A stretch of 64,000 bases of DNA from Octopus bimaculoides (GCF_001194135.2 NC_068983.1:23294182-23358181); one strand, 5' to 3'. Shown: positions 10,754-53,725, numbered from the stretch's first letter. Notes: generated by a model from the sequence alone, not told the origin. Numbers and translations are program-made.

Positions 10754-10917
10754 CTGGATGCAAGGTGAAATGGTGACTGTTCATTATTGTTTTTCAAATT
10801 AACAATAGCCCCAAGTTTCATTAAGTCATCAATAGCAGTTAAATGACCCATTTTAGCAGCATAATGCAGTGGTGTCCAACCACTTATGTCTCTTTCATTT
10901 AGTAGATCTTTACTGTG
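10754..10917 (-). CDS. TRPA1: TRPA1-like exon 10 (HSKDLLNERDISGWTPLHYAAKMGHLTAIDDLMKLGAIVNLKNNNEQSPFHLAS)
   Basis: tttttcag acceptor, GTATGT donor, 164 nt, phase 0/2. Confidence 0.95.
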
Positions 10918-11315: not shown

Positions 11316-11516
11316 TTTCCTCAAGGAATTCCAAAACAAATTTAAATGGGATCCATTTTCAATTGCCAGGTGAAGGAAATTCCGATAGCTTTCATCTTTC
11401 ACTAATAAATTTGCACCTCTTTTAATTAAAACCTGAACCATTTCCCAATGTCCTTTACTTGCAGCTAAAAGAAAAGGAGTTCGGCCACGAGAATCCAGTG
11501 CATTAATGTCAGCACC
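11316..11516 (-). CDS. TRPA1: TRPA1-like exon 9 (GADINALDSRGRTPFLLAASKGHWEMVQVLIKRGANLLVKDESYRNFLHLAIENGSHLNLFWNSLRK)
   Basis: ttttttgaag acceptor, GTATGA donor, 201 nt; aligns to human GADIN..DSEGRSPLILATAS...GRNFLHL. Confidence 0.95.
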
Positions 11517-11789
11517 CTTCAAAAAAAGAAAGAAAAAAATATGTTATATATTTATCAATATAATTGACTGGATTATGATAGAGTCATTCTGGCATTTTTA
11601 AATACATGTTTTATTATATACCCAACCATTTTTGTCCCAGCATCATATAATATTAAGTATGAAAGCCTTTCATTGTACATTTACTAAATAGTTGTTGATA
11701 TTCCATTCCACTGTTTCTTGCTACATCACTGTATTTCAGTGGAAAATCAGTAACTAGATCATAATTAATGTTATGTACTTCTTCTCTTT

Positions 11790-12110: not shown

Positions 12111-14713
12111 ATCATCAGCTGCAGCAGCATTATCAATGTCATCATTGTCCTCATTTAACGTCTGTGTTTTCCATGCTGGGTTGGGTTGCATGGTTTAACA
12201 GAATCCAGCAATTCAGCTCCAGTACCAGTATTGGCATGGTTTCTATGGCTGAATGCCCTTCCTAATGTCAGTGTGTGTTTTGACTGATTACCATGAAGCA
12301 GTCATCTTAGTTTCCACATACAATCTCAAATCAAAACTCCTAACTGCCAACAAGTAGTTACAACAAAGAAACAGTTTCTATACTTATGTTTTTTCTTGTG
12401 TCCTTTCAGCAGTTACAGTCATTGGACCATAGCTAAATCAATGGACCATGATAAGTAAATGTCTTCAAAAGTTTCTAGTCAATTATATGAACTCCAGTAG
12501 AAGCTATGGACTATGTTTTGTGAAACAGGCTTGCATCATGATGTAAGGAGACAAACAAACAGACAAACGAGTACTGGTGTCAGTAGATGGATAATGACAG
12601 AGAAAAACAATATCAAAGATAAAAAGTCTACTAAAAAATAGATTTACATCAACATGTCACACTAAGGGAAGCAGATAGATAATCAGCATAGGTACTACCT
12701 CATGAGCTCTGAACATCCTGTCAGAATAACAAGGTATGGCTACACTCCGAGACAAACACACAAAAAGCCTGTCACTTTGGTTACTATCCACACAGAGAGG
12801 AGAACAGATCACAGGACAATGCTGTTTACAAATTAACCTATGAATGTGGAAATGCAAACAATGGACTGACCAAGTGATAATTGCATGCCAAAATAGCAGA
12901 ACACTTACAACCATGCATCTTCTAGTATAGTAGACCAGCACAACAGTTATGCAAAATGAATAATAAAAAAAATAATAATAAATACATTTAAATAAATAAA
13001 TGAATGAATAAATAAATAAATAAATAAGAAACCCACATATCTCTGTGAGACATCCAAACACTGAAAATTATTGGGTTGAATAAATACAGTTCATTGAGAA
13101 ACAGAAACCAATTTTGAACTGCAGAGGAGAATCAGACATGTAGAAATAGACATTTAGTCCCTGCGAGTTACAAAAGTATGTGATTCCATGTTTCTCTTCT
13201 ATTAATGAGAACACAAATCAATGTCATATGAAGACTTATATATAAATCAAAATTGCTTACAATATAAGCAATAGAACTTATACCAGCAGCAAAGCAGCTT
13301 CCATTCAAAAGTTACTCATCAATTTGTTTATACATTTATCTGTTTGTTTATGCATTCATCCAGTCATACACCAGTCTATATCCCATATACATTTCCCTGA
13401 GTATACAAATATAAAAAGTTACAGTAATGTAGAAGACATGATTTCTCAAAATACAATAGATTACTGGAAGGTTCTAGTCAAAAGCTCAATAAAATGCAAG
13501 CCTAACAGACCAGACATAATGACCTGAGATTGAGGAAAGAAGTTATGCAGAGGAAATCAGTTGCCCAGCTGATGTCAGCATAATGTTAAATGATTAGTGG
13601 AAAAGAAAACATCTAATGAGAATCCTACATTCACTCCACTCAACTTTGAACTTATACCTGTAGTTATAGGGGCACTTGGATATATAACTAACTACCTTAA
13701 CACTAATCTTGAAATGCTAGGCTTTACAAAAGCTAAATGAATATGGCTAATCAGGAAATTACTGTTACAAACCATTAAGAGCACTGTCACAATATGTAAA
13801 ACATTCTAGGTTAGCATTTAATAAATGTATATTCACATGTTTAAATATGCAAACATACATGTGTACACATATGCAATGACATCTATGCTTGCATACATGT
13901 ATACATGTATAATACAATGGAAGTATAAATAGGCAAACAACTGGTGTCAGATTAGATTATGACATTTATATATTTAAACATAATGGTTATTATATAAGGA
14001 TGAAGAAAGTAAGGAGGTGCACAGATAGTTTCTTACAGCTGTTTCAAAAATAGATGCACAGATGGTGCATTTCTCAGTAAACAAACAATAGCTATCCATA
14101 TAAGCAGTGATCTATTCCATCATCAGAGAGAGAATGAGGTAGTTTCTTAGTAGAAGACTTTGATCTACCATCTGTGTAGTAGATCAAAGCTTTCTATCAA
14201 GGATCTATCTCATGCCTTCTCCAATGATGGAATTGATTGCTACTTAAGCTCTCTATTGAAAATATCAGTTATTTGCCTGTTTATATTTCCATTTTATTAT
14301 ACATGTATCTGCTCAATTGATAAACCACCTATAGCCAATCTTTGTTAGGTAGCTATATCTCTGCTTTTAGTTGCAGTTTAAGTTGGAGTCTTTGGTGGCA
14401 AGTCAACTTGAGCACTAATTGTATGTACATATTACATTACATCATCAAACATAATATTACATGAATTTTACATGTAATACATGTAAAATTGCTCATACAT
14501 ATATACAAACATACATGTTTTAATACATACATATGTACTTCATACATATATACATGCATATCTGCATATATATATATACACATACATGCAAGAACATATA
14601 TGCTTTGCTGAATTTGTCTAAATTCCAATGGAAGAGCCTTGTGTCTATTTAGAAGCTGACTCTTTTTCCATTGGTGAAATATTCAAATTATAAAACCATG
14701 TGTATAGACATAC

Positions 14714-14902
14714 CCTATCAAGTAGGAAGTGCACGGCAGCAGCTTGGTTCAGTTGTGCAGCTCTATGAAGTGGTGTCATCTTATGAAGATCAGCCATGGA
14801 AATGGCAGAGGAGAACTTTTCAGGTTGGTATTTTTGCATATATTCTAGAATTTCCACTTTGCCTTGAGATGAAGCACAATGAACTGGAGTAGAGAAATCT
14901 TC
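14714..14902 (-). CDS. TRPA1: TRPA1-like exon 8 (EDFSTPVHCASSQGKVEILEYMQKYQPEKFSSAISMADLHKMTPLHRAAQLNQAAAVHFLLDR)
   Basis: ttttcag acceptor, GTATGT donor, 189 nt, phase 0/0; two ankyrin repeats. Confidence 0.95.
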
Positions 14903-15798
14903 CTGAAAAATATGATTACAATAAATAAGAACCAGCTCTTTTATCAACATCATGTTTTATCTGTTGTTGTCATCATCATCGTCATTGTCATGGTCATTGT
15001 TGTCATCATCATCATTTATGTCCACATTCCATACTGACATGGGTTGAACAGTTCTACAGGATCTGACTTAACCAAAGGGCTGCATTGGTTTCCAGTATTT
15101 GCTTTGGCAAGGTTTTTATGGTTGGATACCTTTCCTGATGCCAATCAGTTTACAGAATGAGCTGAGTACCTTTTTTCATGGTAGACAGTCAAAAATTCAA
15201 TAAAACATTCCTGAGTTCTTTACTAAGCAAAAAAGACATCATCAAGTTTAACTTGTCCATAATGGGTTTAAAACAAGAAAATATAAAATGAAAAAAAAGA
15301 ATAAAAGAAACTTAGTTCTATCTCCTTTTCTCTGTTTTCTTTTCCTTCTTTTTTCTTGTTTTTAACAGTTCTAAGCAAGCAAAACTTGACATCATTTTTG
15401 TCTGGAAGGAATGGAGAATAGCCAACTTAAAGTTTTAAATTTCTACATTTCTGTGAATTTTTCATTTTTCATAACTCTAGTCCTATTTTGAACCTGAGAA
15501 GGACAGATGTACTGTTGATATATTGTTCAATAAACAAAGAATGTCGATTTTTATTGCATCTCACACTCTTCTAATTGACAATTTACCTTAATAAAGAGTT
15601 AAATTAGTCTTCATGGTAGCGTGGTGGCAAAATTGTGAGAATATCAGAAAAAATGCGTTTTGGTATTTCTTCTAACTCATTACGGACTGAGTTCAAATTT
15701 TACCAAGGTCAAGAAAATAAATATTGGTCAAGATATAATCAACTTGCTTGCTTCCTTCAAAATTGCTGACCTTGTACCAAAATTAGAAAGAATTATTA

Positions 15799-18239: not shown

Positions 18240-19005
18240 CAACCAATTAATATCATGAAAAGAAAGAAATGGGCTAAGGAGATGTCAGAAAAATCCAGTT
18301 CATTTTGTATTAGAGTGATTTTCTCAGATGAATCCAGACTTGCATTATTTTCAGACAGTGGACGTGTTTGGGTCTGGAGGTTTCCAATCAAGAATTTGAT
18401 TTGAAACGACTCCAACCAACTGTGAAACATGGCAGTATCTCTGTAATGGTATGGGGAGCTGTCTCCAGCAATGGTCGTTCTGAGCTGATCGAATGTGTTA
18501 GAACCATAAACTCTGAAAAATACATCGAAATACTTAAGCAAGGACTACTTCCGATGTATTCACACGATAATATAATGAAAAATGAGTTTTTATTCATGGA
18601 AGATGGGGCTCCATGCCACACAGCGAAAAGGAATCCACAATGGCTGACTGAAAATGGGATCAAAAAGCTTCTTTGGCCAAGCCAATCTCCTGACATGAAC
18701 CCAATTGAAAATCTTTGGAGCATACAAGATAGAGCTATACGAAAAACTCGATAGAAACCTAAATCTAAAGATGAATTGTTTTGATTGTTGTGCAAAAAGT
18801 GGGCAGAAATTCCACACGAGACAATCACAAAGCTCATCAGTTCAATACCAAAAAGAGTTTCTGAATAAAAAACTGCAAAGGGAATGTCAACTAAATACTA
18901 AAGTATGTAGTCCTGTCTATCGATTACATTTCAATTGTTTGCTTTGCGTATTAAATAAAAGATTTTGAAAATTAACGGTGTCTATTTACTTCCTGCACGT
19001 CTGTG
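18240..19005 (+). mobile_element. Decayed, 5'-truncated Tc1-family (DD34E) transposon
   Basis: [23 protein letters not shown] and [15 protein letters not shown] motifs with 34 residues between D and E; frameshifts; 3' end ...cctgcacgtctgtg followed by TA. Confidence 0.9.
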
Positions 19006-24913: not shown

Positions 24914-25076
24914 CGCAGGAGTTGCTGTGTGGTAAGTAGCTTGCTTACCAACCACATGGTTCTGGGTTCAGTCCCACTGTGTGGCACCTAGGGCAAGTGT
25001 CTTCTACTATAGCCTCGGGCCGACCAAAGCCTTGTGAGTGGATTTGGTAGAAGGAAACTGAAAGAAGCCCGTCGTA

Positions 25077-25123
<47 letters not shown>

Positions 25124-25330
25124 TTGTGTTTGTCCCCCCAACATCGCTTGACAACCGATGCTGGTGTGTTTATGTCCCTGTAACTTAGTGGTTCGGCAAA
25201 AGAGACCGATAGAATAAGTACTAGGCTTACAAAGAATAAGTCCTGGGGTCGATTTGTTCGACTAAAGGCGGTGCTCCAGCATGGCCACAGTCAAATGACT
25301 GAAACAAGTAAAAGAGTAAAGAGTAAAGAG
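24914..25330 (+). mobile_element. SINE family A, full-length copy
   Basis: Head cgcaggagttgctgtgtggtaag, internal (TA)n, (gagtaaa)n tail. Confidence 0.85.
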
Positions 25331-25584: not shown

Positions 25585-25843
25585 TTATAAGAATTGGATG
25601 AGATATGATGGCTCGGCCATCTCTCCCCAGTTCTTATATTAATCATTAAAATCCAGAAATACAACAACACGAGGGATAACGGTAACAACAGATCAATAAT
25701 TTATTCTAGGTTGGTGTAGAGCCGTTTTGTTCCTGGGTGAACAGGCATGCTGCTAGAATACCAAGGAAGCTTCGACCACATGTCGGTATCGAGTTGAGAG
25801 AGCACTGGAAGATACGTGTTGTCACGACCGCTGCTAGATAGAG

Positions 25844-26405
25844 NNNNNNNNNNNNNNNNNNNNNNNNNNNNNNNNNNNNNNNNNNNNNNNNNNNNNNNNN
25901 NNNNNNNNNNNNNNNNNNNNNNNNNNNNNNNNNNNNNNNNNNNNNNNNNNNNNNNNNNNNNNNNNNNNNNNNNNNNNNNNNNNNNNNNNNNNNNNNNNNN
26001 NNNNNNNNNNNNNNNNNNNNNNNNNNNNNNNNNNNNNNNNNNNNNNNNNNNNNNNNNNNNNNNNNNNNNNNNNNNNNNNNNNNNNNNNNNNNNNNNNNNN
26101 NNNNNNNNNNNNNNNNNNNNNNNNNNNNNNNNNNNNNNNNNNNNNNNNNNNNNNNNNNNNNNNNNNNNNNNNNNNNNNNNNNNNNNNNNNNNNNNNNNNN
26201 NNNNNNNNNNNNNNNNNNNNNNNNNNNNNNNNNNNNNNNNNNNNNNNNNNNNNNNNNNNNNNNNNNNNNNNNNNNNNNNNNNNNNNNNNNNNNNNNNNNN
26301 NNNNNNNNNNNNNNNNNNNNNNNNNNNNNNNNNNNNNNNNNNNNNNNNNNNNNNNNNNNNNNNNNNNNNNNNNNNNNNNNNNNNNNNNNNNNNNNNNNNN
26401 NNNNN
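25844..26405. other. Assembly gap (N run); other gaps at 1301-1310, 3955-3964, 32076-32129, 33855-34126
   Basis: Directly visible. Confidence 1.
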
Positions 26406-26790
26406 CAATCATTTTGACTGTGGCCATGCTGGAGCACCGCCTTTAGTCAAGAAAATCGACCCCAGGACTTATTCTTTGTAAGCCTAGTACTTATTCTATC
26501 AGTCTCTTTTTGCCAAACCACTAAGTTATGGGGACATAAACACACCAACATCAGTTGTCAAGCAATGGTGGGGGGACAAACACAGACACACAAACACACA
26601 TACATACACATATATATATATATATATATACGTATATACGATGGGCTTCTTTCAGTTTCCGTCTACCAAATCCACTCACAAGGCTTTGGTCGGCCCGAGG
26701 CTATAGTAGAAGACACTAGCCCAAGGTGCCACGCAGTGGGACTGAACCCGGAACCATGTGGTTGGTAAGCAAGCTACTTACCACACAGCC
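26406..26790 (-). mobile_element. SINE family A copy
   Basis: Reverse complement of the family consensus. Confidence 0.85.
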
Positions 26791-29094: not shown

Positions 29095-29137
29095 GCCTCT
29101 GATGAGAACCCAATAAGGTTCAAAAATTAATTAAGGT
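29095..29137 (+). ncRNA. Degenerate minimal type I hammerhead ribozyme motif (Penelope-type)
   Basis: gcct-CTGATGA-gaacc(caataa)ggttc-AAAA-attaatt-A-aggt; expected GAAA is AAAA, consistent with CpG decay. Confidence 0.6.
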
Positions 29138-29141
29138 TGTT

Positions 29142-29313
29142 AGGCGCAGGAGTGGCTGTGTGGTAAGTAACTTGCTTACCAACCACATGGTTCCAGGTTC
29201 AGTTCCACTGCGTGGCACCCTGGGCAAGTGTCTTCTACTATAGCCTTGGGCCGACCAAAACCTTGTGAGTGGATTTGGTAAACGGAAACTGAAAGAACCC
29301 CGTCGTATATATG

Positions 29314-29352
<39 letters not shown>

Positions 29353-29553
29353 TTGTGTGTTGGTGTTTGTTCCCCCAACATCGCTTGACAACCAATGCTG
29401 GTGTATTTATGTCCCTGTAACTTAGCCGTTCGGCAAAAGAGACCAATAGAATAAGTACTAGGCTTACAAAGAATAAGTCCTGGGGTCGATTTGCTAGACT
29501 AAAGGCGGTGCTCCAGCATGGCCACAGTCAAATGACTGAGACAAGTAAAAGAG
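29142..29553 (+). mobile_element. SINE family A, full-length copy, ending about 20 bp from the exon 3 donor
   Basis: Family head and tail present. Confidence 0.85.
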
Positions 29554-29574
29554 TACTGAAATTGCAAAACTTAC

Positions 29575-29750
29575 CTGCAAGATATTAATTGCTTTCATGT
29601 CAGCAGCTATATGAAGTGGTGCCATATGACAATTGTTTAAGATTGTTGTATCAGCACTGTGACAAAGCAAGAAATCAACACCGAGATTTTGTCTCATCTT
29701 CACTGCAATGTGAAGTGCTGTATCGCCATTATTTTCTTGTTTATTGATAT
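29575..29750 (-). CDS. TRPA1: TRPA1-like exon 3 (DINKQENNGDTALHIAVKMRQNLGVDFLLCHSADTTILNNCHMAPLHIAADMKAINILQ)
   Basis: ctttatacag acceptor, GTAAGT donor, 176 nt, phase 1/0; aligns to human GNTPLH...NMMAPLHIAV. Confidence 0.95.
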
Positions 29751-30758
29751 CTGTATAAAGAGAAGATAGTCTTGCAATCATAAGTGTTGTTGTGTTGATA
29801 ATAATAAAGATTGTTGTAATAACAAATATGAATTTACCTATAAAATAAAATATAAATTTGACAGACTTATAAACTTTGACAGACATATAAATTTAAACTA
29901 ATACAAATAAAAACTGAATATAAAATAGATTGTTTAATCTTATTGTTTTAATTAAATAGTTAATAATATTTATTTGTGTATAGTGTTGTTATAGTTTAGT
30001 TAAATTGATTATGTGTATTTCTTTAGAATATTAGGTAATAATAGTTGAACATGCAGTAATAATAGTTAAAGTGCAGATGAAATATATAGTGTGTGTTTAA
30101 TTGGCGACCCCCCACCCCAAAATGACCATCCCCAAGTATAGAAATATAAATTCTCTTTCAAAAACACATATTAGTAATTAATCCAGTACAATATTGTATA
30201 TAATCTCTAGATACTGGATAAGTTAGTAAATCAGTAATTAGAGGAGATTTGTAAAGGTTTTCTTTACATAATAGGTGCAGACGTGGCTGTGTGATAAGAA
30301 GTTTGCTTTCCAATCCTATGGTTCCAGATTCAGTCCCACAGTACATTGATTTTACCCAGGAGAAACAATGGTGCTAAGATGGCCCTATGTCACTGTGTTA
30401 GCCAATAGACTGCATGTATTATGAGTGATACTCCATTGGTTCAATGAGCGTTCTGTTATTTTGTCAAATGAACATCCAACTCTTTAGATTAACAAGTAGG
30501 TGGTTGTAGTATTCTACAGACATGTTTACCTTTAACATAATTCTCAAGCCAAATCAGTATGACAACAATATGTGACAAAATTGAACCTTCATATTACATG
30601 TACAACCCTTCTGATGAGTTTCCAAGGCTATGGTAAAGACATTTGACCAAAATATTATGCAGTGGGATTGAACACACACACACATGTAGACAGCAGAAGT
30701 CATCAATATCAGTAAAATAGCAACTATTTTACAGCTGTTGTTCATATTAGATACTTAC

Positions 30759-31780: not shown

Positions 31781-32020
31781 ACGATAAAGCAGTTGTATAA
31801 TGTCAACTTAATGTGACAGTCCCAATAAGGAAATCATACTGCTGCTATTTAGCCCTAGGAAGCTGGACCGCTTCCTGTCAGCCATGACACATTTCCTGTG
31901 TCCTTATGTTTGTGAGGGGGAGACAAGCACCTCCACCCAGCCTAGCCTGCATTCAAGGACATGTTTCTGAGTCTTTGCTCGTCATCAGCCTGAAGTAGCA
32001 TGACCAGCTGGCTATATATG

Positions 32021-32068
<48 letters not shown>

Positions 32069-32130
32069 TGTATATNNNNNNNNNNNNNNNNNNNNNNNNN
32101 NNNNNNNNNNNNNNNNNNNNNNNNNNNNNC

Positions 32131-32161
<31 letters not shown>

Positions 32162-32279
32162 AGTGATGCGATAAAGTAGTTGTATGCTATCCACTTAATG
32201 TGACAATGTGTCAAGGCTGACAGGAAGCGGTGCTGCTTCCTAGGGCTAAATAGCAGTAGTATTATTCCCTTCATGGGAC
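31781..32279. mobile_element. Probable non-autonomous Penelope-like element (two related segments, one partly inverted, carrying a hammerhead)
   Basis: 31781-31818 resembles 32158-32205 (direct); 31819-31892 resembles the reverse complement of 32206-32279; hammerhead lies between them. Confidence 0.5.
31948..32000 (-). ncRNA. Minimal type I hammerhead ribozyme, sense to the TRPA1 pre-mRNA
   Basis: Minus strand: ttcagg-CTGATGA-cgag(caaaga)ctca-GAAA-c(at)g-TC-cttgaa; stem I 6 bp, stem II 3 bp plus a C.A mismatch, palindromic stem III ACATGT, GUC site at 31960-31958. Confidence 0.75.
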
Positions 32280-33854
32280 TGACACCTTTTCTACAGATCA
32301 AGCAGGGCCTCCTACCTGATGGGGTGTGTGATGTGTTCGCCTTCCTACTTACAAGAACTTTGGTCTTTGCAAAATTGACTCTAAGGCCCTTCGATTCTAA
32401 ACCTTGCTTCCACACTTGAAATTTCTTCTCTAGTTCTGGTAGTGATTCTGCTATGAAAGCCAGGTCATCAGCATAGAGGAGCTCCCAGGGGCAACCTGTC
32501 TTGAATTCCTCTGTTATTGCCTGGAGGACTATGATGAATAAGAGGGGGCTGAGGGCTGATACTTGGCGGACCCCTACTTCTACCTGGAATTCTTCACTAT
32601 AATCATTGCAAGCCCTAACTTTACTAATAGAATCTCTGTATAGGGTCTGCACAGTCCTTATGAACCATTTGTCAATCCCCAGTTTCCACATCACCCACCA
32701 GATGAGGGATCAGGGGACCTTGTCAAAGGCTTTCTCCAAGTCCACAAAAGCCAAGTATAGGGGTTTATCTTTGGCTAGTTATTTCTCCTGCAGTTGCTGC
32801 ACCAGGAATATAGCATTAGTGGTGCTTCTACCTGGCACAAAACCAAACTGCATCTCATCTAAGCAGACTCTTTCCCTAATTAGTTGGGCTATGACCCTCT
32901 TTGTGACCTTCATCTCCTGATCCAGCAGTTTGATACCCCTGTAGTTATTTCTATCTAAAGCATCACCTTTACCTTCGTAGCAGTTGATTATGGGACTGCT
33001 ATGCCAATCATTGGATATGACTCCACCTTGAACTACCTGGTTTACAATACGGGTGACTAGGCCATGGCGCATACCACCAGATGTTTTAAGCATTTCAGCA
33101 GTGATTCCTGATTGGCTGGAGGCATTTTCTGGCTTCATACCCATTATTGCTTTATCTACCAGGGTGCTGTCTATTTGGATAGCTGATCCCTCTACTGGAT
33201 CAACATTTGGCAAGCTCTCCTCTTCCCATTCATTCTCCACATTCAGCAGTCTTTCATAATGGCTTCTCCAAGCCTCTTTCTTTTCCGAATCATTAAAAGC
33301 AAGTGCACCATCATCCATGCACACACATTTCTCTCCTGTGACATCACAATTTTCTCTCACACACTGTCTTGCAATCCGAAATACTTCAGTTCTTTGGTCT
33401 TCACATCACTTGACATTGGCAAACTTCTTTTCTGCTTTGCCCTTGGCTATGTATACCTGTCGCCCAGCCTCCCTTTTGGCTATCTGGTACGGTTCCTTGC
33501 TACCCCCCACCCTTCCAGGCCTGTTTCTTTACTCTGATGGCTTTCTCTACCGTATTATTCCACCACCACATTACTCTAGGTCTGGAAGGGACTTTGCACC
33601 ATCCGCAGACTTGGTCTGTGGCATTCAGTAAGCTGTCCCGTATGAATTTCCAGCTACCTTCTATGTCTGATGTCTGTAGCTCCTCCTCCCTCTCATCAAA
33701 TTTCTTGATGAAGATGTCCCTAAATCTCTGACCATGTGAAGGGTTCTTTAGCTTCCAAATCCTTCACTTCTGTGTTGGTCTGCTTCTTGGCATCCTTCTG
33801 GTGTCTAATGACTAGTCTATGCTCAGGGGTGCATTCCTCACCTGGGAGGGTCTT
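32280..33854 (-). mobile_element. RTE-clade LINE, APE end through reverse transcriptase (decayed)
   Basis: ORFs with LPGEECTPEHRLV, NYRGIKLL, QFGFVPGRST, GVRQ.SALSPLLF and WELLYADDL; in-frame stop near 32779. Confidence 0.92.
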
Positions 33855-34248
33855 NNNNNNNNNNNNNNNNNNNNNNNNNNNNNNNNNNNNNNNNNNNNNN
33901 NNNNNNNNNNNNNNNNNNNNNNNNNNNNNNNNNNNNNNNNNNNNNNNNNNNNNNNNNNNNNNNNNNNNNNNNNNNNNNNNNNNNNNNNNNNNNNNNNNNN
34001 NNNNNNNNNNNNNNNNNNNNNNNNNNNNNNNNNNNNNNNNNNNNNNNNNNNNNNNNNNNNNNNNNNNNNNNNNNNNNNNNNNNNNNNNNNNNNNNNNNNN
34101 NNNNNNNNNNNNNNNNNNNNNNNNNTGCTTCAAATAACGGTCATGGATTGGTCGTTTCAATTAACGGTCATAGATGCGTAATGCACAGACCAAATAAATT
34201 TAATACAGATTCATCCTATTAAAAAAATATTGAAGAAAACCTTACTCC

Positions 34249-45859: not shown

Positions 45860-46313
45860 AATAAAACTTATGAAGATTTTTATTTGAAATCAATATGGCT
45901 AATGTAAATCAAGAACATCACAACACAAGAATCTTGAAAAGTTCGCACAAAAATGAGATTTAAAAATGAAAATTTAAAAATATTCACATTCATTATTGTA
46001 AAGTTTACGACAGTCAAAAAAAGTTTTTAAATGACCATGTTATGATAAAATCTTTGTTTTTGTTAAAACATTGCGCTTTGTTAATGGATGAGGTAAAACA
46101 CTATTTGTAAGGACAAAAAGGATGTTAATTTCTAACACAAATTCACAGAATATATTATGACTGCTAGTTCAGTATGTCTTTTATCTTTGAAACTGAGATA
46201 ACTAGAACATAAAACATCAGTGCCACAAAAATAACAAAACTATCACTTCAATCCAGTCACACTAAACGATGGAAGATGATGATGAGTGTGGAAGTACAAG
46301 AATCGTCTGCCAT
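45860..46313 (-). other. Probable terminal 3' UTR exon of the chromodomain-TM gene
   Basis: Strong acceptor tttgcttttatttcag; AATAAA on the minus strand at 45884-45879; lower boundary approximate. Confidence 0.55.
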
Positions 46314-46693: not shown

Positions 46694-47996
46694 TTAAACA
46701 TTATCTTAGTAATATCAAGATTTAGATGATGTGACTTTATTTTTTGAATGGCACATAAGATGGGTGCGAGAGGCTGGATCTGGCTAGTTTTAACATAAAA
46801 CAGGTAGAATTTTTGGGCCAGATGCAACTAGTTTAAATGTTAAAGGGTGAGATTAAAATGAAATTTTCTCACAGACCCCAGTATTTTGAAAGATCTTACT
46901 CAAGGTGATTTCACTAACTGACAATATACACATTCTTCCGGTTTCATCTCTCAAAAGATATGCAAGTGAATAATTATATGCTGAGGAATTAAACATTTTA
47001 CACAGCAGCCTTTTAAAATTTTGAACACAGATCATAGACCCCAGTACTACATTTGAGAATCCTTAGAAATCTACAAAGCCCAAGTTAGGAAATGCTGCTT
47101 TATTATAATGACAGGTGAAAATTTTGATTAGCTCATCTGTCTGCTGCCTATAAGCATACTTAATAATAAGATAATTTTATGCATTTATGTTTATTTAGCT
47201 GAATGAAATAGCACATCAGGAAAATGATACAGACAGGCATTTTATATCAGTGAAAAAAAAATTCATATCTACTCTGTAATCCCAAACTAAGTACACCAAG
47301 AACTATGGTTCCTGGAGATGTCCACATTTTATTAAAAGGTGAGAAATTTAGCTTCATGATTCTAGGATTAAAAAATTCTTTGCACAAGATGAAGAGGTAT
47401 CATAACGGTCAAATAATATTGATCTAGTTATGTTCAAAATTACAATATGCATATGGATTTTTGTTTTGTCACTTTTTCATCTTGTAGATATTATTCTAAC
47501 AATATTTTTAACATTATACGTACACTAAAAGTAGCTTTTGATTTTTTCTTCTACTTGCTACACGTGGAAGAATCAGTGTCTATGACTTTTGTAGGCCTCT
47601 CAAAACTAGAGATATTGATGCTAATGTTCCTCCTGAATCTTTGTAAGATAACACCTGCAGGAAAGGTACAAGGAAGGAGGGAATTCCTGAGGGACAACAT
47701 TCTGGGAAGGATTAATGTGGAATCTGGGGGTGGGGAAGGAGGGTTAAGCATAAAAGAATTTTTTTAAATTAAAGTCTTTTCTAATCCTTAAATCAGAAAT
47801 GATATGAAAGCAAAATTTCAATAAACTAATGCACTATAAAACAAGCATTACAGCTGAATACGAAAGAATAGGAATGGTTACAGCACTAATTAATACAAAC
47901 AAAATACATTTTTTTCTTTTTCTATTTCAAAATTAAAAATAAGTATGAAATAAAATAAACATCAACTTACAATGAGAAGTATGAATTTTCGGCAGG

Positions 47997-48317
47997 TTAT
48001 TTTACGAGGAATTTCCCAAGTAAGAAACTAATTGCAACAATTATTAAGCCAACTATGCAAACAACAATAGGCCAGGTCTTTTCAGAGTGATTTCCAACAC
48101 ATGTCACTGCGTCAGAAGCAATGCTTTCTTCCTTTTTCTCATCAGGTTCAACAGAATCAACTGAATCAACAGTGCTCTTTTCCTGTACCTCATCATTTAT
48201 ATTGGTATTCTCTTCTTCCTCTATTTCAGCAGCCTTTGCTGCTGCTCTCATTTTGATCCTTCGAGTTAATACTGTGGTTAAACTTTCTGATATTGGTGTG
48301 TATACTTCTGTTTTTTC
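47997..48317 (-). CDS. Chromodomain-RS-TM protein, last coding exon (acidic linker + TM WPIVVCIVGLIIVAISFLLG + KFLVK*)
   Basis: ctttatttttcag acceptor, phase 0, 106 codons then TAA at 47999-47997; exon continues 26 nt to a GTAAGT donor at 47970. Confidence 0.85.
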   Translation of the reverse strand, partial: EKTEVYTPISESLTTVLTRRIKMRAAAKAAEIEEEENTNINDEVQEKSTVDSVDSVEPDEKKEESIASDAVTCVGNHSEKTWPIVVCIVGLIIVAISFLLGKFLVK

Positions 48318-49104
48318 CTGAAAAATAAAGATTAAAAATATACATTTTAAAAACGATTTATTTTCTGTATGATGCAACTTCCTTAAACGGCTGTTTGAAA
48401 AGATATCCAAAACCATTAAAAAAAAACAAAAACAAACAAATAATGAAACTTTAGTTTATAGATTGCCTCAGTCTATAACTGGAATGAGCAGGAGCCAAAG
48501 GGGAGCCTCTACTTAATTGATCTGCTAGAAATCTTCCTCAAATTGTATTAACATTTTAAATAAAAGACACTGACTAATGAAATCCCTAATATACACAAAG
48601 ATGGGATGGAACACTTGCTTGATAAGGGTTATTCTGGGACTAAACTAGGATATGCCACCTTTTTAGATTGCTCAATATGACAGCTTTGAATCTGATACAG
48701 TATCTTCAAGAAGGAATTGCCTAAAATGTTAACTGATGTGCTATAGCTATTAAATAACATTTCTCTTCTTTATCCTGGCATAGGCATGGCTGTGTTGTAA
48801 CAATGTTCATTTTATAATCATGTTATTTTGGTTATCTCTTTGCATAACACCCTGGGCAAGTGTCTTTCTACTGCAACCTTCAGTTGGCTGATCAATGTAT
48901 TGTGAGTGAAACTGGGAGAGAAATTTTACAAGAGCCCCACTGTATGGCTAAAAAGCTCACTTTGCAACCATGTAGTTTCAGGTCCAACCCCTGTGTTGCA
49001 CCTTGGGCAAATGTCTTCTACTGTGGCCCTAGGTTGACCAAAGCCTTGAGTGGATTTGGTAGATGGCAAATGAATGAGGTCTGTTGTTTATGTGTACAGA
49101 AATG

Positions 49105-49254
49105 GCTGTGTAATAAGAAGCTTACTTCCCAAGCACATGATTCTGGGTTCAGTCCCACTGTGTGGGACACCTTGGGCAAATGCCTCCTACTATAGCCTTG
49201 GGCCAACCAAAGCCTTATGAGTGGATTTGGTAGAAGGAAACAGGAAGAAGCCTG

Positions 49255-49315
<61 letters not shown>

Positions 49316-49570
49316 GATAGATAGATACACACACATATATATATACATATATATACATACATGTGTGTATGTATTTGAGTGTGTTTGTCCCCGCCACCAT
49401 CGCTTGACAACTGATGTTGGCATGTTTACGTCACTGTAACATAGCAGTTCAGCAAAAGAGACTGATAGAATAAGTACTAGGCTTATAAAGAATAAGCCCT
49501 GGGGTCAATTTGTTCGACTAAAAGATGGTGCTCCAACATGGCCGCAGTCAAATGACTGAAACAAGTAAAA
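49105..49570 (+). mobile_element. SINE family A copy with expanded (TG)n
   Basis: Family head, body and tail present. Confidence 0.8.
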
Positions 49571-50913
49571 GAAAATAAAAAGAAAAAATGTGTGCACATT
49601 ATGTGACAGTTGCGAAGGGGTATCATCGACATAAAAGTGAGGTCATGGTAGGTGGGGGGATACATTACCTTGCTCAGAAACAGGTGATGGTTAGTGACAG
49701 GCATCCTGTTGTAGAAAATCTGCTTCAACAAATTCTTTCTGAGCCATGCAAGCATAGAAGGAGAGTGGACGTTGAGATGTATACTTGCTTGCTCTCATCT
49801 ATTTTCATCGATTGTCAGTAATTATTATCTATCTTTCAAGTAAAGGATCTTTTATTTCACACATCTTCAAAAAGATGCAATACCAGCAGATGGTTGAATG
49901 GAGAACTGACAACAACACTGCTTATAGCTCATGCTTTTCAGAAGCACAAATGCAAACACACATACAACAGACTTCCTTCAGTTTCAATCTACAAAATACC
50001 CTCACAAGATTTCGTTCAGCTCAGGAACATAATAGCAACACTTGCCCAAGGTGCCATGCAGTAGGATTGAACCTGAAACTACATGGATAGAAAGTGAACA
50101 TCTTAACCACACAACCATACTTCTGTGTGTGAGTATGTGTGTGCACACATACATTTATTTCTTCTTCTTTGCAATGACACTATATGTTTAGGTTTCCTGT
50201 AAACAATACATCCTAGAACTTGCCGGTTTTGATGTGTGAAGACCAATGGAATAAAAATACCAAATCTGTAAAAAAGGTAATGGTTGACAACAGGCTGGGT
50301 TGTCTTCTCCTAAATTTCATTTGTTTAAAAATTAATGTTACCCTTATAGATATTTCAACAAAAAGGTTATGGGTGTCACACACACATTTAGTATTCCATT
50401 GTCCCTGTAGAGAAGGCCTGTTATTTCACAGGACTCAGTAACTCACTTTATTGTTGGCAGCTCTTACTGAAATGTCTAATGCCCATTTCTTACAGCTAAC
50501 AGCATCTTAACTTATTCAGAAGTAGATTAGTCTCTTCTGCTTAATTTTAGAAAACTGAACCCATGGCACCCTGTTTAATATGAAAATGTTTATGTAATGT
50601 TTTCAATAAAAATGTCTCTCCAGCTTACAGACTCAGAAGTTGGATCCTATGTGAATGTTCAAGATGTTTATTTTCCTTCTGAATGGGATGCTGGTCAGTC
50701 ACAGTTAACCATCACCAGATACCACTAGCACTAATTTTCAGCTGAGTATTCTAGAGCAACAGGGAATAAAGTATTTTACTCAAGGATACAATGTGTCCAG
50801 TCTGAGGATTGACCCCCTTGATTTAATGATTATGAGCTCAACTACTTCATCATACACCTTCTCTTATAATAAGAGTTTATCACATCAGAACAAAGAAATT
50901 TGCCATGACTTAC

Positions 50914-51231
50914 TGTAGTTATCCTGGTTGATGTAAAGGAAGTAACAGGAGTCTGTTCAACGCCTTCATTCGAAAGCTCTGTGACAACTGATTGGCTGTC
51001 AACGACCTCTTCCAGTTGAGTTGTACTGTCTTCCGTAATTTCTTTTGTAACATCTTCACTTGGTGGTATGGTTTCCAAATCTTCAGCTGGAGCTACAATT
51101 TTTTCTTCAGGCGGAGCTATTATTGGTGTGCTTTCTCGAGACGGTTTCTCTGGGGTGCCTATGTCTCTCTTTACAGGAAGCTTTGTTCGGGTGCGAGATC
51201 GAGAACGGGAACGTGATTTTGAGCGACGTCT
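50914..51231 (-). CDS. Chromodomain-RS-TM protein, middle exon (RRRSKSRSRSRSRTRTK...GTPEK...RITT)
   Basis: tttgctatcag acceptor, GTAAGT donor, 318 nt, phase 0/0; RS dipeptides, then an E/T/P/S-rich linker; CpG retained. Confidence 0.88.
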
Positions 51232-52664
51232 CTGATAGCAAAACGAAAAATTAAACATTCTAAATTTACCTTAAAATTCAAATATTTTAACACTTTAAAA
51301 AACTTGGATGAGTCAGAATTTAATCCTTTTGTGATATTTCAAATGGAAAACACAACTGTGTGTTTCAAAGATAAAAAATTTATAAGGTTCAGTAGCAGAA
51401 TAACTTTCTCATTAAACTATGTTTGGAACAAGTAAATAAAAATTTTTCATCTAAACTTATGAGGGTAGATTTTTATTCAAATATGAACCTTTTAAAAATG
51501 GACAGTTTGTATAATCAAATTTGGTACCAAAAGGATTAAACAACATGTAGGCTTGGATATAATTTCATTTTAATAAAATGATCTCTACATTGAAACAAAA
51601 TATGATGTAAAGAGAGATTTTATTCATTCTCACCAATTCCCACAGACTAAGGAAGCTCTAAGCACAAGGTCAAATTACACAGCAAATGGAACAGTGTTCA
51701 ATGTATACAGTCATTTATTCTATTAAACCTAGAAGATGAGATATAGCTGACTGCCATGAGATTTAAACTCATAAGCTATAGGAACAAAATTATATATTGT
51801 AAAGCATTTAATCCAGCCTCTTGGACTTTTGCCAACTCTAAATGCTACATACTACTAATAATAAATGATGTATAATGATGATCCCTGCTCCTTACCCTCT
51901 AGCATTTAAACCTCGCTATATCTGACCTGAAGAGTCTACCTGTTTTATGTTCAGACTGGATAGATCAAGCCTCTCACACCTCCAAACAATGTTATTCTAA
52001 AAATAAATGATCACATCTTTGAAACCTCAAAGCTACAGGATAATTAATGAGTGAATTCAAAATGTGAACAAATAAATATCAGATTTGATAGAGTAATCTG
52101 AATGCTGAAAGTTAAAGAAGTGGTAGTTTTATGAAGTAGTTTGTTTTGACTGCAATATCTTACTGGTACCTATTAATTCCAGCAGGATGGAAAGCAGAAT
52201 TCATCTAAATGGAATTTGAACCAAGGACACTCAACCTAAATATTGTAAGGCATTCAGTTTGATGCCCTACAGATTCTACCAACTTTCAATAATTTTTAGG
52301 TGTAACATTAACAATGATGAAGGCAGTGAGCTGGCAGAACTTTTAGTATGCCAGATAAAATTGCTTAGCAATATTTCATCCATTTGCATGTTCTGAGTTC
52401 AAATTTTGTCAATGTATTTAGTTAAGTTGTTTTATATTGTTCAAACTTTGAACAATATAAAACAACCTAACTAAATATATGAGCTACTGTGTAAAGCAGA
52501 AAAACATGAAATTCTACAAGCAGGCATGTATCTTATGCAAAATCTGTGATGAGCCTAAATATAGGATAAAATCTTTATAAGAATTTATCAAGTAGTTAGC
52601 GTGAAAAACCGCATAAAGGAAAAATTTATTAATTATTCCCGTTAAATATATTGATTTATATTAA

Positions 52665-52964
52665 GAGCATTACTATACATAAATGCCTCACGCGAGGAAG
52701 GACTCGTAAAGTCAAAACTACCATAATAATATATATATATATATATATATATATCAGTGGCGACCCAGCCACTCGGGCTGTTCAGGCTTAGCTTGAGTAT
52801 AAACTTAGTGAAGTGAACATGTATTTGCAAGCTGATTTAATTTCTGCCAACATTAACTTCAAGTATGTAATTTCAGCCAATAACTCGGGTTCCTTTGATT
52901 GAACCTGGTAGTTTTGACTTTAAGAGTCCCTCCTAGCATGAGGCATTTATGTATAGTAATACCC
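52665..52964. mobile_element. 300-bp MITE with about 55-bp TIRs, possibly Kolobok-type
   Basis: attactatacataaatgcctca...aaagtcaaaactacca and its reverse complement; flanked by TTAA / TTTA. Confidence 0.6.
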
Positions 52965-53566
52965 TTTATATAAATATATAAGGTGGCATTTCACAATTTA
53001 CAACCGAAAGGCACAAATATAGTTGTGACTAAGGATGCAAATCAGCACCATCAGAAACAAAGAGTCAAAACAACTCTTAGCAATGGGTAAGCACTTATCT
53101 AATGACTGACAAGGGAAACAAGCTCTCAACAGCAAGTGTGAAGGAGCCAGATCCTTGATAATTTTAGATTTGTTTAGTCCTCATCAGTGACCCTTACCCA
53201 GTTGCTGAGGGTTAAAACTTAACATATTCATATATTCATATTTTGAGTTCTATTTTTCCCGTTTGCATCAACATACGTATGTATGCAAATACATACATAC
53301 ATACATTACATATAAATAGGGGAAGGGAATGTGTTTATTATTTGTGCTTCCTTGTCTTAACATTGCATGATTGTTGTAAATGAATGTTATTCATTTCCAA
53401 AATGCTGTGAAACAAGTTTAGTCATACAGAAATATTACTTTGCTTGGAAACAGATAAATGTTGGCAACAGGAAAGGCATCAGGCTATAGAAAATCTGGTT
53501 CAAACCCTGTCTGATTCATGCAAGCATGGAAAAGTGGACGTTATGATGATGATGATGAACACTTAC

Positions 53567-53725
53567 TCGAGTAGATTTATTTCTCTTGTACTCTTCCAGA
53601 AGTGGTGTTGCACTTGTAAGATTTGATGCTGGTTCCCATGAGTCTTCTTCTGCACCAAAATTTTTCCATCGAATAAGGTATTCTATTTGCCCTCTTTTCT
53701 TCCTGTCTTTGAGCACAGCTCCAAT
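53567..53725 (-). CDS. Chromodomain exon (IGAVLKDRKKRGQIEYLIRWKNFGAEEDSWEPASNLTSATPLLEEYKRNKSTR)
   Basis: ttgaag acceptor, GTAAGT donor, 159 nt, phase 0/0; EYLIRWKNF and SWEP..NL match the HP1/Polycomb chromodomain consensus. The first two domain residues would be in an unidentified upstream exon. Confidence 0.92.

What the first reader, a model, noticed from the sequence alone, without database searches (positions are those of the whole stretch)
47997..53725. Chromodomain fused to an RS domain and a C-terminal membrane anchor: candidate direct heterochromatin-to-nuclear-envelope tether
Seen: three phase-0 exons with canonical splice sites give 265 aa: a chromodomain (aromatic-cage W and F present in IRWKNF), a basic/RS tract (KRNKSTRRRRSKSRSRSRSRTRTK), an acidic E/T/S/P linker with a CDK-type T-P-x-K site (GTPEK) and several TP sites, then one hydrophobic stretch of about 20 residues with only KFLVK before the stop, i.e. 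tail-anchored topology. Known: vertebrate lamin B receptor is Tudor + RS + membrane (sterol reductase) and tethers heterochromatin; C. elegans CEC-4 uses a chromodomain to anchor H3K9-methylated chromatin at the nuclear periphery; typical chromodomain proteins (HP1, Polycomb, MPP8, CDY) are soluble. Inference: a methyl-lysine reader built into an inner-nuclear-membrane protein, LBR-like in layout but with chromo instead of Tudor and no reductase, and possibly released in mitosis by SRPK/CDK phosphorylation. I do not recognise this architecture as a named gene.
Basis: partly seen in the sequence, partly recalled or inferred. Interest (0 to 1): 0.85.

Follow-up and report, generated by a model that had tools for sequence, protein, structure and literature searches.

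The report
Membrane-anchored chromodomain protein of molluscs
This octopus gene really does encode a histone-methylation reader (chromodomain) joined to an arginine/serine tract and a C-terminal membrane anchor, and it belongs to an unstudied family found in all major mollusc classes that probably ties silent chromatin directly to the nuclear envelope.

Summary
Three phase-0 exons on the minus strand (53567-53725, 50914-51231, 47997-48317) have canonical splice sites and give 265 aa. These equal residues 10-274 of Octopus bimaculoides RefSeq XP_014785412.1, auto-named "heterochromatin protein 1 isoform X1". The missing first exon (MSSEEDIYE) lies outside the window and supplies the predicted cage tyrosine.

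The protein has four parts:
- an HP1/CDYL/MPP8-type chromodomain with a Y/W/F cage;
- an RS tract;
- a roughly 160-aa disordered linker, rich in S, T and acidic residues, with CDK-type sites;
- one very hydrophobic C-terminal helix followed by 5 residues.

It is not HP1, CDY, MPP8 or LBR, because it lacks the chromoshadow, crotonase, ankyrin, Tudor and reductase parts that define them. The same architecture occurs in more than 35 molluscs from all major classes. These share a conserved TM motif and a four-exon structure, and there is a probable nemertean orthologue. I found no paper describing the family.

Best reading (inferred, not shown): a membrane-anchored methyl-lysine reader that reaches the inner nuclear membrane and tethers H3K9me/H3K27me chromatin. 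It is CEC-4-like in function, LBR-like in its reader+RS layout, and emerin-like in its anchor. Localisation, ligand and any homology to CEC-4 remain untested. Conserved alternative first exons remove the cage tyrosine.

The parts
53567..53725 (-). Coding exon 2 (53 aa): chromodomain core IGAVLKDRKKRGQIEYLIRWKNFGAEEDSWEPASNL... with cage W (53666-53668) and F (53657-53659)
   Evidence: Translation and splice sites. Pfam Chromo E=4.5e-11. PDB sequence hits to CDYL/CDYL2/HP1. 99.4% nt identity and 0 nonsynonymous changes against O. vulgaris.
50914..51231 (-). Coding exon 3 (106 aa): RS tract (51181-51231), CDK-type TPEK (51145-51156), then an acidic, S/T/P-rich disordered linker
   Evidence: RS tract invariant in the family alignment. 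[ST]Px[KR] sites enriched family-wide. pLDDT about 50.
47997..48317 (-). Coding exon 4 (106 aa + stop): linker with a predicted helix (LTTVLTRRIKMRAAAKAAEIEEEE), TM helix WPIVVCIVGLIIVAISFLLG (48015-48074), tail KFLVK (48000-48014), stop TAA (47997-47999)
   Evidence: TM helix pLDDT about 91-96. TM and tail unchanged between O. bimaculoides and O. vulgaris and nearly so in Argonauta.
47971..47996 (-). Start of the 3' UTR, ending at a conserved GTAAGT donor (47969-47970) 26 nt after the stop codon
   Evidence: The same donor is used in the O. vulgaris model.
46205..46313 (-). Tentative downstream (3' UTR) exon, acceptor tttcag|ATGGCAG. Its 3' end was not determined.
   Evidence: 97.5% identity to O. 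vulgaris L003 38804-38960, against 87-92% for introns.

Best explanation
The gene encodes a 274-aa membrane protein whose whole functional part faces the cytosol or nucleoplasm. The steps below are marked as shown or inferred.

1. Shown from sequence and models. An N-terminal canonical chromodomain carries an HP1-beta-type aromatic cage: Tyr from exon 1, plus Trp and Phe from exon 2. An RS tract follows directly. Next comes a disordered linker of about 160 aa, rich in acidic residues and S/T, with CDK-consensus sites. Last is a single very hydrophobic C-terminal helix followed by only 5 residues.

2. Inferred. The protein is inserted post-translationally into the ER as a tail-anchored protein by the GET/TRC40 route, which handles very hydrophobic anchors. 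Its extramembrane part of about 27 kDa can diffuse through the pore membrane to the inner nuclear membrane. It is retained there because the chromodomain binds methylated H3 tails (an H3K9me2/3- or H3K27me3-type ARKS motif) and the basic RS tract binds chromatin or nucleic acid and may self-associate. The protein would thus tether silent chromatin directly to the nuclear envelope.

3. Inferred. Phosphorylation of the RS tract and adjacent [ST]-P-x-[KR] sites by SRPK- and CDK-type kinases loosens the tether in mitosis, as in LBR.

4. Inferred. Conserved alternative first exons that lack the cage tyrosine give isoforms with weakened or altered methyl-lysine reading.
For: Gene model: canonical junctions; identical to RefSeq XP_014785412.1 residues 10-274; spliced transcripts of relatives.

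Chromodomain: Pfam hit. Best solved relatives are CDYL, CDYL2 and HP1-alpha/beta at E of 1e-12 to 1e-10, with cage positions aligned. An AlphaFold model of a family member that carries exon 1 has pLDDT 95-97 over the domain. It superposes on H3K9me3- and H3K27me3-bound MPP8, CBX1, CDYL2, Chp1 and HP1 at 0.7-1.2 A with TM-score 0.8-0.93.

Anchor: one segment with KD 2.87, negative insertion free energy and 5 residues after it; helix pLDDT above 90. There is no N-terminal signal-like hydrophobic segment, since the N-terminus is acidic.

Selection: chromo exon has 0 nonsynonymous changes; TM and tail are unchanged; introns are 87-92% identical.

Family: more than 35 mollusc proteins from chiton, gastropods, bivalves and cephalopods share chromo + RS + one TM, with the conserved motif D-[YH]-[PA]...LSF.LE. 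A four-exon structure with the same intron positions is shared by octopus, Argonauta, chiton and a nemertean.

Regulation: CDK-consensus sites in the linker number 55 observed against 17.8 expected, and 0 of 500 shuffles reach that.

Targeting: the C-terminal flank of the TM helix is mostly neutral or acidic across the family. This argues against mitochondrial outer-membrane targeting, which favours basic tails and less hydrophobic anchors (established knowledge of tail-anchor sorting).

[quoted passage not shown] LBR uses Tudor (1-60) + RS (61-89), regulated by SRPK1 and CDK1 (PMC5617974).
Against: Nothing here shows localisation, topology, ligand or phosphorylation. A tail anchor alone only predicts ER entry, and accumulation at the inner nuclear membrane depends on unproven retention. 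Many orthologues in gastropods and bivalves have 30-77 residues after the TM helix, so the strict tail-anchored mode is not a family-wide feature. Their luminal tails have an unknown role. Some heterobranch gastropod members appear to lack the third cage aromatic, though the alignment there is uncertain. Conserved isoforms lack the first cage residue, so methyl-lysine reading may not be the only activity. The linker evolves fast (12 nonsynonymous changes in exon 4 between two Octopus species), so no lamin- or HP1-binding motif could be identified.
Confidence: 0.55

Rival explanations
1. It is a nuclear-envelope protein, but its main job is not tethering methylated heterochromatin. The RS tract and chromodomain would instead serve post-mitotic envelope reassembly on chromatin, chromatin compaction, or recruitment of SR-type or RNA partners at the envelope. 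These are LBR/LAP2-beta-like general chromatin docking roles.
For: The RS tract is the most invariant feature after the chromodomain core. CDK-site enrichment points to cell-cycle control. LBR's RS domain drives oligomerisation, compaction and mitotic regulation (PMC5617974). Conserved isoforms without the cage tyrosine suggest functions independent of methyl-lysine.
Against: The chromodomain is the best conserved part (0 nonsynonymous changes). It keeps a full cage in the main isoform and in most family members, which would be unnecessary for methylation-independent docking.
Confidence: 0.17
2. It is an ER, outer-nuclear-membrane or other endomembrane protein whose chromodomain faces the cytosol and binds a non-histone partner. 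The partner could be a methylated protein or an unmethylated peptide, as with the chromodomains of chloroplast SRP43. Chromatin would not be involved.
For: A tail anchor by itself gives ER insertion. Chromodomains with non-histone ligands exist: MPP8-DNMT3A K47me2 and CBX7-SETDB1 peptides are among the structural neighbours, and cpSRP43 appears among the sequence hits. Luminal tails in gastropods and bivalves hint at functions on the other side of the membrane.
Against: The nearest relatives by sequence and structure are all histone H3K9/K27 readers. The basic RS/KRKK patches resemble nuclear localisation and chromatin-binding elements. The extramembrane part is small enough to reach the inner nuclear membrane.
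Confidence: 0.15
3. It is a tail-anchored protein of the mitochondrial outer membrane or of peroxisomes.
For: The octopus tail KFLVK has net charge +2, and basic tails can favour mitochondria or peroxisomes.
Against: The anchor is very hydrophobic (KD 2.87) and about 20 residues long. Orthologues have neutral or acidic flanks such as EEYF and LEKYV.F. Both features are typical of ER-directed anchors.
Confidence: 0.05
4. It is a gene-model artefact: the hydrophobic end is not part of the mature protein. The O. vulgaris model removes exactly the TM-coding 80 nt as an intron.
For: The cryptic GT..AG pair and a downstream exon are conserved in the window.
Against: Four RefSeq isoforms in two Octopus species, Argonauta, and two assembled transcripts all keep the TM helix. 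The TM sequence is conserved in frame across the phylum with a specific motif. The alternative frame gives a tail with no counterpart in other species' proteins.
Confidence: 0.03

Closest known systems
C. elegans CEC-4 (chromodomain anchor of H3K9me chromatin at the inner nuclear membrane)
   Same: Small protein (270 vs 274 aa) with a single HP1-like chromodomain and no chromoshadow domain. Its C-terminal part is what places CEC-4 at the nuclear envelope, independently of lamin and even in yeast (PMC4783997, PMC5788517). This is what an intrinsic membrane anchor like the one here would do.
   Different: CEC-4 is described as worm-specific, with a C-terminal domain lacking recognised homology (PMC5788517). 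From my own recollection, its chromodomain sits about 80 residues from the N-terminus (cage mutations Y87/Y111), whereas here the domain is at the extreme N-terminus. An RS tract is not reported for CEC-4. I could not obtain the CEC-4 sequence with these tools, so homology and the presence of a TM helix in CEC-4 are untested. The only nematode hit to the family profile (Bursaphelenchus) has no TM helix.
Lamin B receptor (LBR)
   Same: A methyl-histone reader domain of about 60 aa at the N-terminus is followed directly by an RS tract with a CDK-type site beside it. A membrane anchor follows, and the N-terminal part faces the nucleoplasm and tethers heterochromatin (PMC5617974).
   Different: There is one TM helix instead of eight, and no sterol-reductase domain or second globular (HP1-binding) domain. 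There is no sequence homology outside the low-complexity RS tract (Pfam finds only Chromo).
Emerin / LAP2-beta (tail-anchored LEM-domain proteins of the inner nuclear membrane)
   Same: Same overall design: a small N-terminal chromatin-contact domain, a long disordered linker, and a single C-terminal tail anchor with a few luminal residues. They use the post-translational ER insertion and diffusion-retention route (established knowledge).
   Different: Their chromatin contact is indirect, with the LEM domain binding BAF. Here the contact domain is a direct histone-mark reader. There is no LEM domain.
CDYL/CDYL2, HP1 (CBX1/3/5), MPP8 chromodomains
   Same: Closest by sequence (CDYL 48 bits, CDYL2 45 bits, HP1-alpha 44 bits) and by modelled structure. 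The cage Y/W/F is identical in type to that of human HP1-beta (Y21/W42/F45, established knowledge).
   Different: Those proteins are soluble and are defined by second domains (crotonase-like, chromoshadow, ankyrin) that are absent here. None has a TM helix.
PRR14
   Same: Proposed functional equivalent of CEC-4 in mammals: a modular H3K9me-heterochromatin tether regulated by phosphorylation (PMC7272351).
   Different: PRR14 is not a membrane protein. It binds lamin A/C and reads H3K9me only indirectly, through HP1.

Membership tests
Chromodomain superfamily (Pfam PF00385) | Sequence match above the curated threshold | tested here: met
   42.9 bits against a cutoff of 25.1, E=4.5e-11. 62 PDB chromodomain sequences match at E<1e-3.
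Chromodomain superfamily (Pfam PF00385) | Three-stranded sheet plus C-terminal helix, with three aromatic cage residues | tested here: met
   Model of family member P0004 has pLDDT 95-97, with strands 10-19, 22-29 and 38-41 and a helix from residue 46. It superposes on ligand-bound chromodomains at 0.7-1.2 A. The cage is Y (exon 1) / W / F. The first cage residue is encoded outside the window.
Chromodomain superfamily (Pfam PF00385) | Binding of methylated lysine (H3K9me/H3K27me) | not testable with these tools
   Needs peptide binding assays.
HP1 family (the RefSeq name of this gene) | Chromoshadow domain (PF01393) C-terminal to the chromodomain | tested here: not met
   The Pfam scan of the 265 aa finds only Chromo. 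True HP1-like hits carry PF01393, and this family's members do not.
CDY/CDYL family (name given to several orthologues) | C-terminal enoyl-CoA hydratase/crotonase-like domain | tested here: not met
   No such Pfam match. The proteins are 200-350 aa and consist of chromo + RS + linker + TM.
MPP8 (name given to the priapulid protein) | Ankyrin repeats after the chromodomain | tested here: not met
   No Ank match in the protein. The Ank exons in the window belong to the neighbouring gene.
Lamin B receptor | N-terminal Tudor domain | tested here: not met
   The N-terminal domain is Chromo, not Tudor.
Lamin B receptor | RS tract directly after the reader domain | tested here: met
   RRRSKSRSRSRSRTRTK starts 1 residue after the chromo exon. 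There are 9-28 RS/SR dipeptides in every mollusc member.
Lamin B receptor | Eight-TM sterol C14-reductase domain | tested here: not met
   Only one hydrophobic segment and no reductase Pfam hit.
CEC-4-type anchor | Single chromodomain, no chromoshadow, and a C-terminal part that confers nuclear-envelope association | tested here: inconclusive
   The first two features are met. A C-terminal TM helix would confer membrane association, but nuclear-envelope localisation is not testable here.
CEC-4-type anchor | Sequence orthology to C. elegans CEC-4 | not tested
   The CEC-4 sequence was not obtainable with the tools. Family-profile searches returned no TM-bearing nematode protein.
Tail-anchored membrane proteins | Single TM helix within about 30 residues of the C-terminus, no N-terminal signal sequence | tested here: met
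   Octopus has 5 residues after the TM helix and an acidic N-terminus. The same holds in Argonauta, two other cephalopod-like transcripts, the chiton and Tegillarca. It does NOT hold for most gastropods and bivalves, which have 30-77 residues after the TM helix.
SR splicing factors | RNA-recognition motif plus RS domain | tested here: not met
   No RRM.

The most novel reading that the evidence does not exclude
This family is an ancient protostome (possibly bilaterian) solution for fastening methylated chromatin directly to the inner nuclear membrane. C. elegans CEC-4, so far regarded as worm-specific, would be a diverged member of it. Conserved alternative first exons would act as a built-in switch between a methyl-lysine-reading isoform and a non-reading isoform of the tether.
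Probability: 0.15. Interest if true: 0.85.

Novelty: new variant of a known kind. Interest (0 to 1): 0.66.

Why it matters
Only three H3K9me-based tethers are generally cited: LBR, PRR14 and CEC-4 (PMC7272351). The only one that reads the mark directly with a chromodomain, CEC-4, is considered nematode-specific (PMC5788517). A conserved phylum-wide family that joins a canonical chromodomain to a membrane anchor would show that direct mark-to-membrane tethering is not a worm oddity.

It would also give a minimal, modular model (reader, RS switch, spacer, anchor) for studying how peripheral heterochromatin is built and released. And it would open the question in Lophotrochozoa, where nuclear-envelope biology is almost unexplored.

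Practically, it shows that the current database names for these genes (HP1, CDY-like, cec-1-like, MPP8-like) are misleading.

Tried and rejected
1. Exon 1 in the window: peptide and degenerate DNA searches for MSSEEDIYE, for the alternative SRLPV exon and for the MVELQ exon found nothing. They lie beyond position 64000; exon 1 is 22.6 kb upstream of the chromo exon in O. vulgaris.

2. First AlphaFold run on the window's 265 aa with 5 sequences: the chromodomain was poorly modelled (mean pLDDT 51.8), because the N-terminal strand was missing and the alignment shallow. It was replaced by a run on a full-length relative with 36 sequences.

3. Homology of the priapulid (P0093) and hemichordate (P0109) proteins beyond the chromodomain: the TM/juxtamembrane profile scored no better than shuffles. 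I therefore treat them as architecture-only look-alikes. The apparent motif P-x-[FY]-L-x-[LF] that I noticed by eye in Priapulus did not survive this test. The bed-bug protein P0114 (three chromodomains, weak hydrophobic end) was set aside as unrelated.

4. Searching for more phyla with the three outgroup proteins returned only hymenopteran HP1-like proteins and more molluscs.

5. CEC-4: six papers were read for its mode of membrane attachment. None states it. The original Cell 2015 paper is not held. One literature query was wasted by a loose min_terms setting.

6. The Priapulus gene structure could not be fetched.

Full report
OBSERVATION. The region is part of an intron-rich animal gene on the minus strand. 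Exon A is 53567-53725 (acceptor attgaag|ATT, donor CGA|gtaagtg). Exon B is 50914-51231 (ctatcag|AGA ... ACA|gtaagt). Exon C is 47997-48317 (ttttcag|GAA ... TAA). All are phase 0 and together give 265 aa.
- cage Trp at 53666-53668 and Phe at 53657-53659;
- RS tract RRRSKSRSRSRSRTRTK at 51181-51231;
- TPEK at 51145-51156;
- hydrophobic stretch WPIVVCIVGLIIVAISFLLG at 48015-48074;
- tail KFLVK at 48000-48014.

IS THE GENE MODEL REAL? Four independent lines say yes.
1. The 265 aa are identical to residues 10-274 of Octopus bimaculoides RefSeq XP_014785412.1, "heterochromatin protein 1 isoform X1". This identifies the window as O. bimaculoides and shows that an independent pipeline joins the same exons.
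2. Two relatives (P0003, P0004) are uninterrupted 300- and 320-aa ORFs on 1.7- and 1.3-kb contigs assembled from public sequencing runs. They are therefore spliced transcripts carrying chromodomain, RS tract and TM helix in one frame.
3. The O. vulgaris and Argonauta hians genomes have the same exons with the same junctions.
4. Between O. bimaculoides and O. vulgaris, the chromo exon is 99.4% identical with no amino-acid change, and the TM helix and tail are unchanged. Alignable intron sequence is 87-92% identical.

The missing first coding exon encodes MSSEEDIYE, followed by a gtaagc donor. In O. vulgaris it lies 22.6 kb upstream of the chromo exon, and 8.8 kb upstream in Argonauta. That explains why I could not find it in the window.

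ANATOMY. Residue numbers in the first three points are for the window's 265 aa.
- Chromodomain. Pfam Chromo scores 42.9 bits (cutoff 25.1) over residues 3-48. The nearest solved sequences are CDYL (48 bits), CDYL2 (45), HP1-alpha (44) and HP1-beta (42), with cage positions aligned. The first AlphaFold run, with a truncated N-terminus and 5 sequences, was poor. A second run used a full-length relative and a 36-sequence family alignment. It gives pLDDT 95-97 for a canonical three-strand-plus-helix chromodomain. That model superposes at 0.7-1.2 A on H3K9me3- or H3K27me3-bound MPP8, CBX1, CDYL2, Chp1 and HP1. The cage Y/W/F is of the same type as in human HP1-beta (Y21/W42/F45, established knowledge).
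- RS tract and linker. The RS tract begins one residue after the chromo exon ends. It is followed by about 160 residues rich in E, T, S and P, with pLDDT around 50. One moderately confident helix (LTTVLTRRIKMRAAAKAAEIEEEE) lies within this linker.
- Anchor. There is a single hydrophobic segment, with mean Kyte-Doolittle 2.87 over 19 residues and summed Hessa free energy about -1.7 kcal/mol. Five residues follow it, and it is modelled as a helix at pLDDT above 90. The N-terminus is acidic, so there is no signal peptide. This is tail-anchored topology, with the whole N-terminal part on the cytosolic or nucleoplasmic side.

THE FAMILY. An exhaustive profile search returned 9148 chromodomain proteins. 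I screened the best 150 for a strongly hydrophobic segment, which picked out about 20 clusters with the same layout. Two profile searches of the named database added more. Source names place them in all major mollusc classes:
- Polyplacophora: Liolophura.
- Gastropoda: Patella, Haliotis, Littorina, Batillaria, Pomacea, Nucella, Babylonia, Lymnaea, Biomphalaria, Physella, Elysia, Plakobranchus.
- Bivalvia: Solemya, Tegillarca, Magallana/Crassostrea, Saccostrea, Mizuhopecten, Ylistrum, Potamilus, Sinanodonta, Mercenaria, Ruditapes, Dreissena.
- Cephalopoda: Octopus (3 species), Argonauta, and two unidentified transcripts.

All of these carry only automatic names: HP1, CBX1/2/5-like, CDY-like, testis-specific CDY2-like, cec-1-like, cec-3-like, or uncharacterized. 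The oyster protein occurs on many transcript-sized contigs, so it is expressed.

Shared features across the family are:
- an acidic N-terminus ending in [FY]-E-V;
- the chromodomain;
- an invariant RSRS core;
- an S/T-rich linker with a recurrent TEVV(T/K) motif;
- a TM helix framed by a conserved Asp before it and ...LSF.LE at its end.

CDK-consensus [ST]-P-x-[KR] sites in the linker are three times more frequent than composition predicts (55 against 17.8; 0 of 500 shuffles reach 55). The sequences are related, so this is not a formal probability.

Gene structure is conserved. Octopus, Argonauta, the chiton and a nemertean gene all have four coding exons, with intron 1 in phase 0 right after [FY]-E, intron 2 between chromodomain and RS tract, and intron 3 in the linker. 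The limpet has a fifth exon encoding a 51-aa luminal tail. Most gastropods and bivalves have 30-77 residues after the TM helix, so strict tail-anchoring is a feature of cephalopods, the chiton and some bivalves, not of the whole family.

Outside molluscs the evidence is thinner. The nemertean Tubulanus protein matches the mollusc TM/juxtamembrane profile better than 298 of 300 composition-matched shuffles and shares the exon structure, so it is a probable orthologue. The priapulid and hemichordate proteins share only the architecture.

HOW IT PROBABLY WORKS.
- Shown: a canonical methyl-lysine-reader fold with a complete cage, a basic RS tract, a long flexible spacer and one membrane-spanning helix at the C-terminus, all conserved.
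- Inferred from established knowledge of tail-anchored proteins: a very hydrophobic anchor with neutral or acidic flanks in orthologues goes to the ER by the GET/TRC40 route. An extramembrane part of about 27 kDa is below the size limit for lateral passage to the inner nuclear membrane. Retention there needs a nuclear ligand, which the chromodomain and RS tract would provide.
- Inferred by analogy: the RS tract and flanking CDK sites are phosphorylated by SRPK and CDK1 at mitosis to release chromatin, as in LBR (PMC5617974).

The result would be a one-polypeptide tether of methylated chromatin to the envelope. I put this at 0.55. The more limited claim, that it is a membrane-anchored chromodomain protein, I consider close to certain.

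A FURTHER FEATURE. Annotated isoforms and transcripts use alternative first exons. MSSEEDIYE, which carries the cage Tyr, is in O. bimaculoides X1, O. sinensis X2, P0004, and the O. vulgaris and Argonauta genomes. M(M)(S/T)TPSRLPVACSRT(Q/R)K is in O. sinensis X1 and Argonauta X1, with a related MSLPRRTSRLPV... in transcript P0003. MVELQ is in O. bimaculoides X2. The last two lack an aromatic at the first cage position. Mutating cage aromatics abolishes binding in HP1 and in CEC-4 (PMC5788517). These conserved isoforms are therefore likely to be weak or non-readers of methyl-lysine, which would make a built-in switch or competitor. This is inference.

COMPARISON WITH KNOWN SYSTEMS. In function it would be closest to C. 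elegans CEC-4. Its chromodomain sequence is closest to CDYL and HP1. It is a member of none of these families:
- no chromoshadow domain, so not HP1, despite the RefSeq name;
- no crotonase domain, so not CDY;
- no ankyrin repeats, so not MPP8;
- no Tudor or sterol reductase, so not LBR;
- no LEM domain.

Orthology with CEC-4 could not be tested because I could not obtain its sequence. The literature I could read calls CEC-4 worm-specific, says it has a C-terminal domain required for envelope localisation, and describes it as membrane-associated, without stating how (PMC5788517, PMC7272351, PMC4783997). Profile searches returned no TM-bearing nematode protein.

RIVALS. The rivals and their confidences are:
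- a nuclear-envelope protein with a mainly RS-driven role independent of methylation (0.17);
- an ER or outer-membrane protein reading a non-histone ligand (0.15);
- a mitochondrial or peroxisomal tail-anchored protein (0.05);
- a model artefact (0.03).

On the artefact rival, the O. vulgaris GenBank model (CAI9719236) lacks the TM helix because it removes an 80-nt GT..AG segment that is exactly the TM-coding part, and then reads out of frame into a downstream exon. The genome there encodes the intact TM helix. The splice signals and the downstream exon are conserved in the window. The downstream exon is best explained as a genuine 3'-UTR exon, with its donor 26 nt after the stop. Whether the 80-nt excision ever occurs is unresolved.

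NOVELTY. Full-text searches for chromodomain + tail-anchored/transmembrane + nuclear envelope/heterochromatin/mollusc, and for CEC-4 + tail-anchored, found no description of such a family. The library does not cover all journals. I rate it a new variant of a known kind: a direct heterochromatin-to-nuclear-membrane tether. It is real and conserved, but its function is so far only inferred.

Noticed in passing
outside window; O. vulgaris L003 10001-10027, Argonauta L004 10001-10048 and 31716-31745: There are conserved alternative first coding exons. One (MSSEEDIYE) carries the first aromatic-cage residue. Two others (M..TPSRLPVACSRT.K and MVELQ) do not. The SRLPV-type exon is shared by octopods and by a more distant cephalopod-like transcript (P0003).
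   Followed up: partly
window 47969-47996 and about 46205-46313 (minus strand): There is a conserved GTAAGT donor 26 nt after the stop codon and a downstream exon (97.5% identical to O. vulgaris), so the gene probably has a 3'-UTR intron. The O. vulgaris model CAI9719236 also excises an 80-nt GT..AG segment (window about 48019-48098) that is exactly the TM-coding part. This is either an artefact or a TM-skipping isoform; which one is unresolved.
   Followed up: partly
window 10705-10998, 11313-11543, 14648-14956, 29497-29892 (minus strand): These are ankyrin-repeat exons of the next gene downstream on the same strand. In Argonauta the gene downstream of the orthologue has Ank + Ion_trans domains, so synteny with a TRPA-like channel gene appears conserved among octopods.
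   Followed up: partly
window 31945-33405 (minus) and 18332-18751 (plus): A reverse-transcriptase (RVT_1) fragment and a DDE_3 transposase fragment lie within the introns of the ankyrin gene.
   Followed up: partly
window 52649-52980; 52412-52480; 49260-49361: Three features lie in introns of the chromo-TM gene. The first is a MITE-like element with 75-nt terminal inverted repeats that are 88% complementary. The second is a 34-nt near-perfect palindrome. The third is a compound (TG)n(TA)n microsatellite.
   Followed up: no
window about 8529-8888, 24991-25290, 26418-26765, 29123-29527, 49193-49504: A dispersed SINE-like repeat recurs in both orientations. It is recognisable by the same pseudo-translation (LWPCWSTAFS...PNPLTRLWSAQGYSRRHLPKV), and one copy lies in intron 3 of the gene studied.
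   Followed up: no
window about 25840-26410, 33850-34130, near 32000-32100 and near 1300: Runs of N mark assembly gaps.
   Followed up: no
L007 (Patella vulgata) 12505-12661; proteins P0089/P0113 (Nucella) and P0070/P0178 (Babylonia): The luminal tail after the TM helix in the limpet is encoded by a separate fifth exon. Most gastropods and bivalves have 30-77 residues after the TM helix, partly conserved (e.g. P[DN][FL]GVL..RL). Two neogastropods each have two paralogues.
   Followed up: partly
L006 (Tubulanus polymorphus) 1069/1070: Intron 1 of the nemertean gene appears to use a GC donor (GAG|gcgagt) at the position where molluscs have GT.
   Followed up: no
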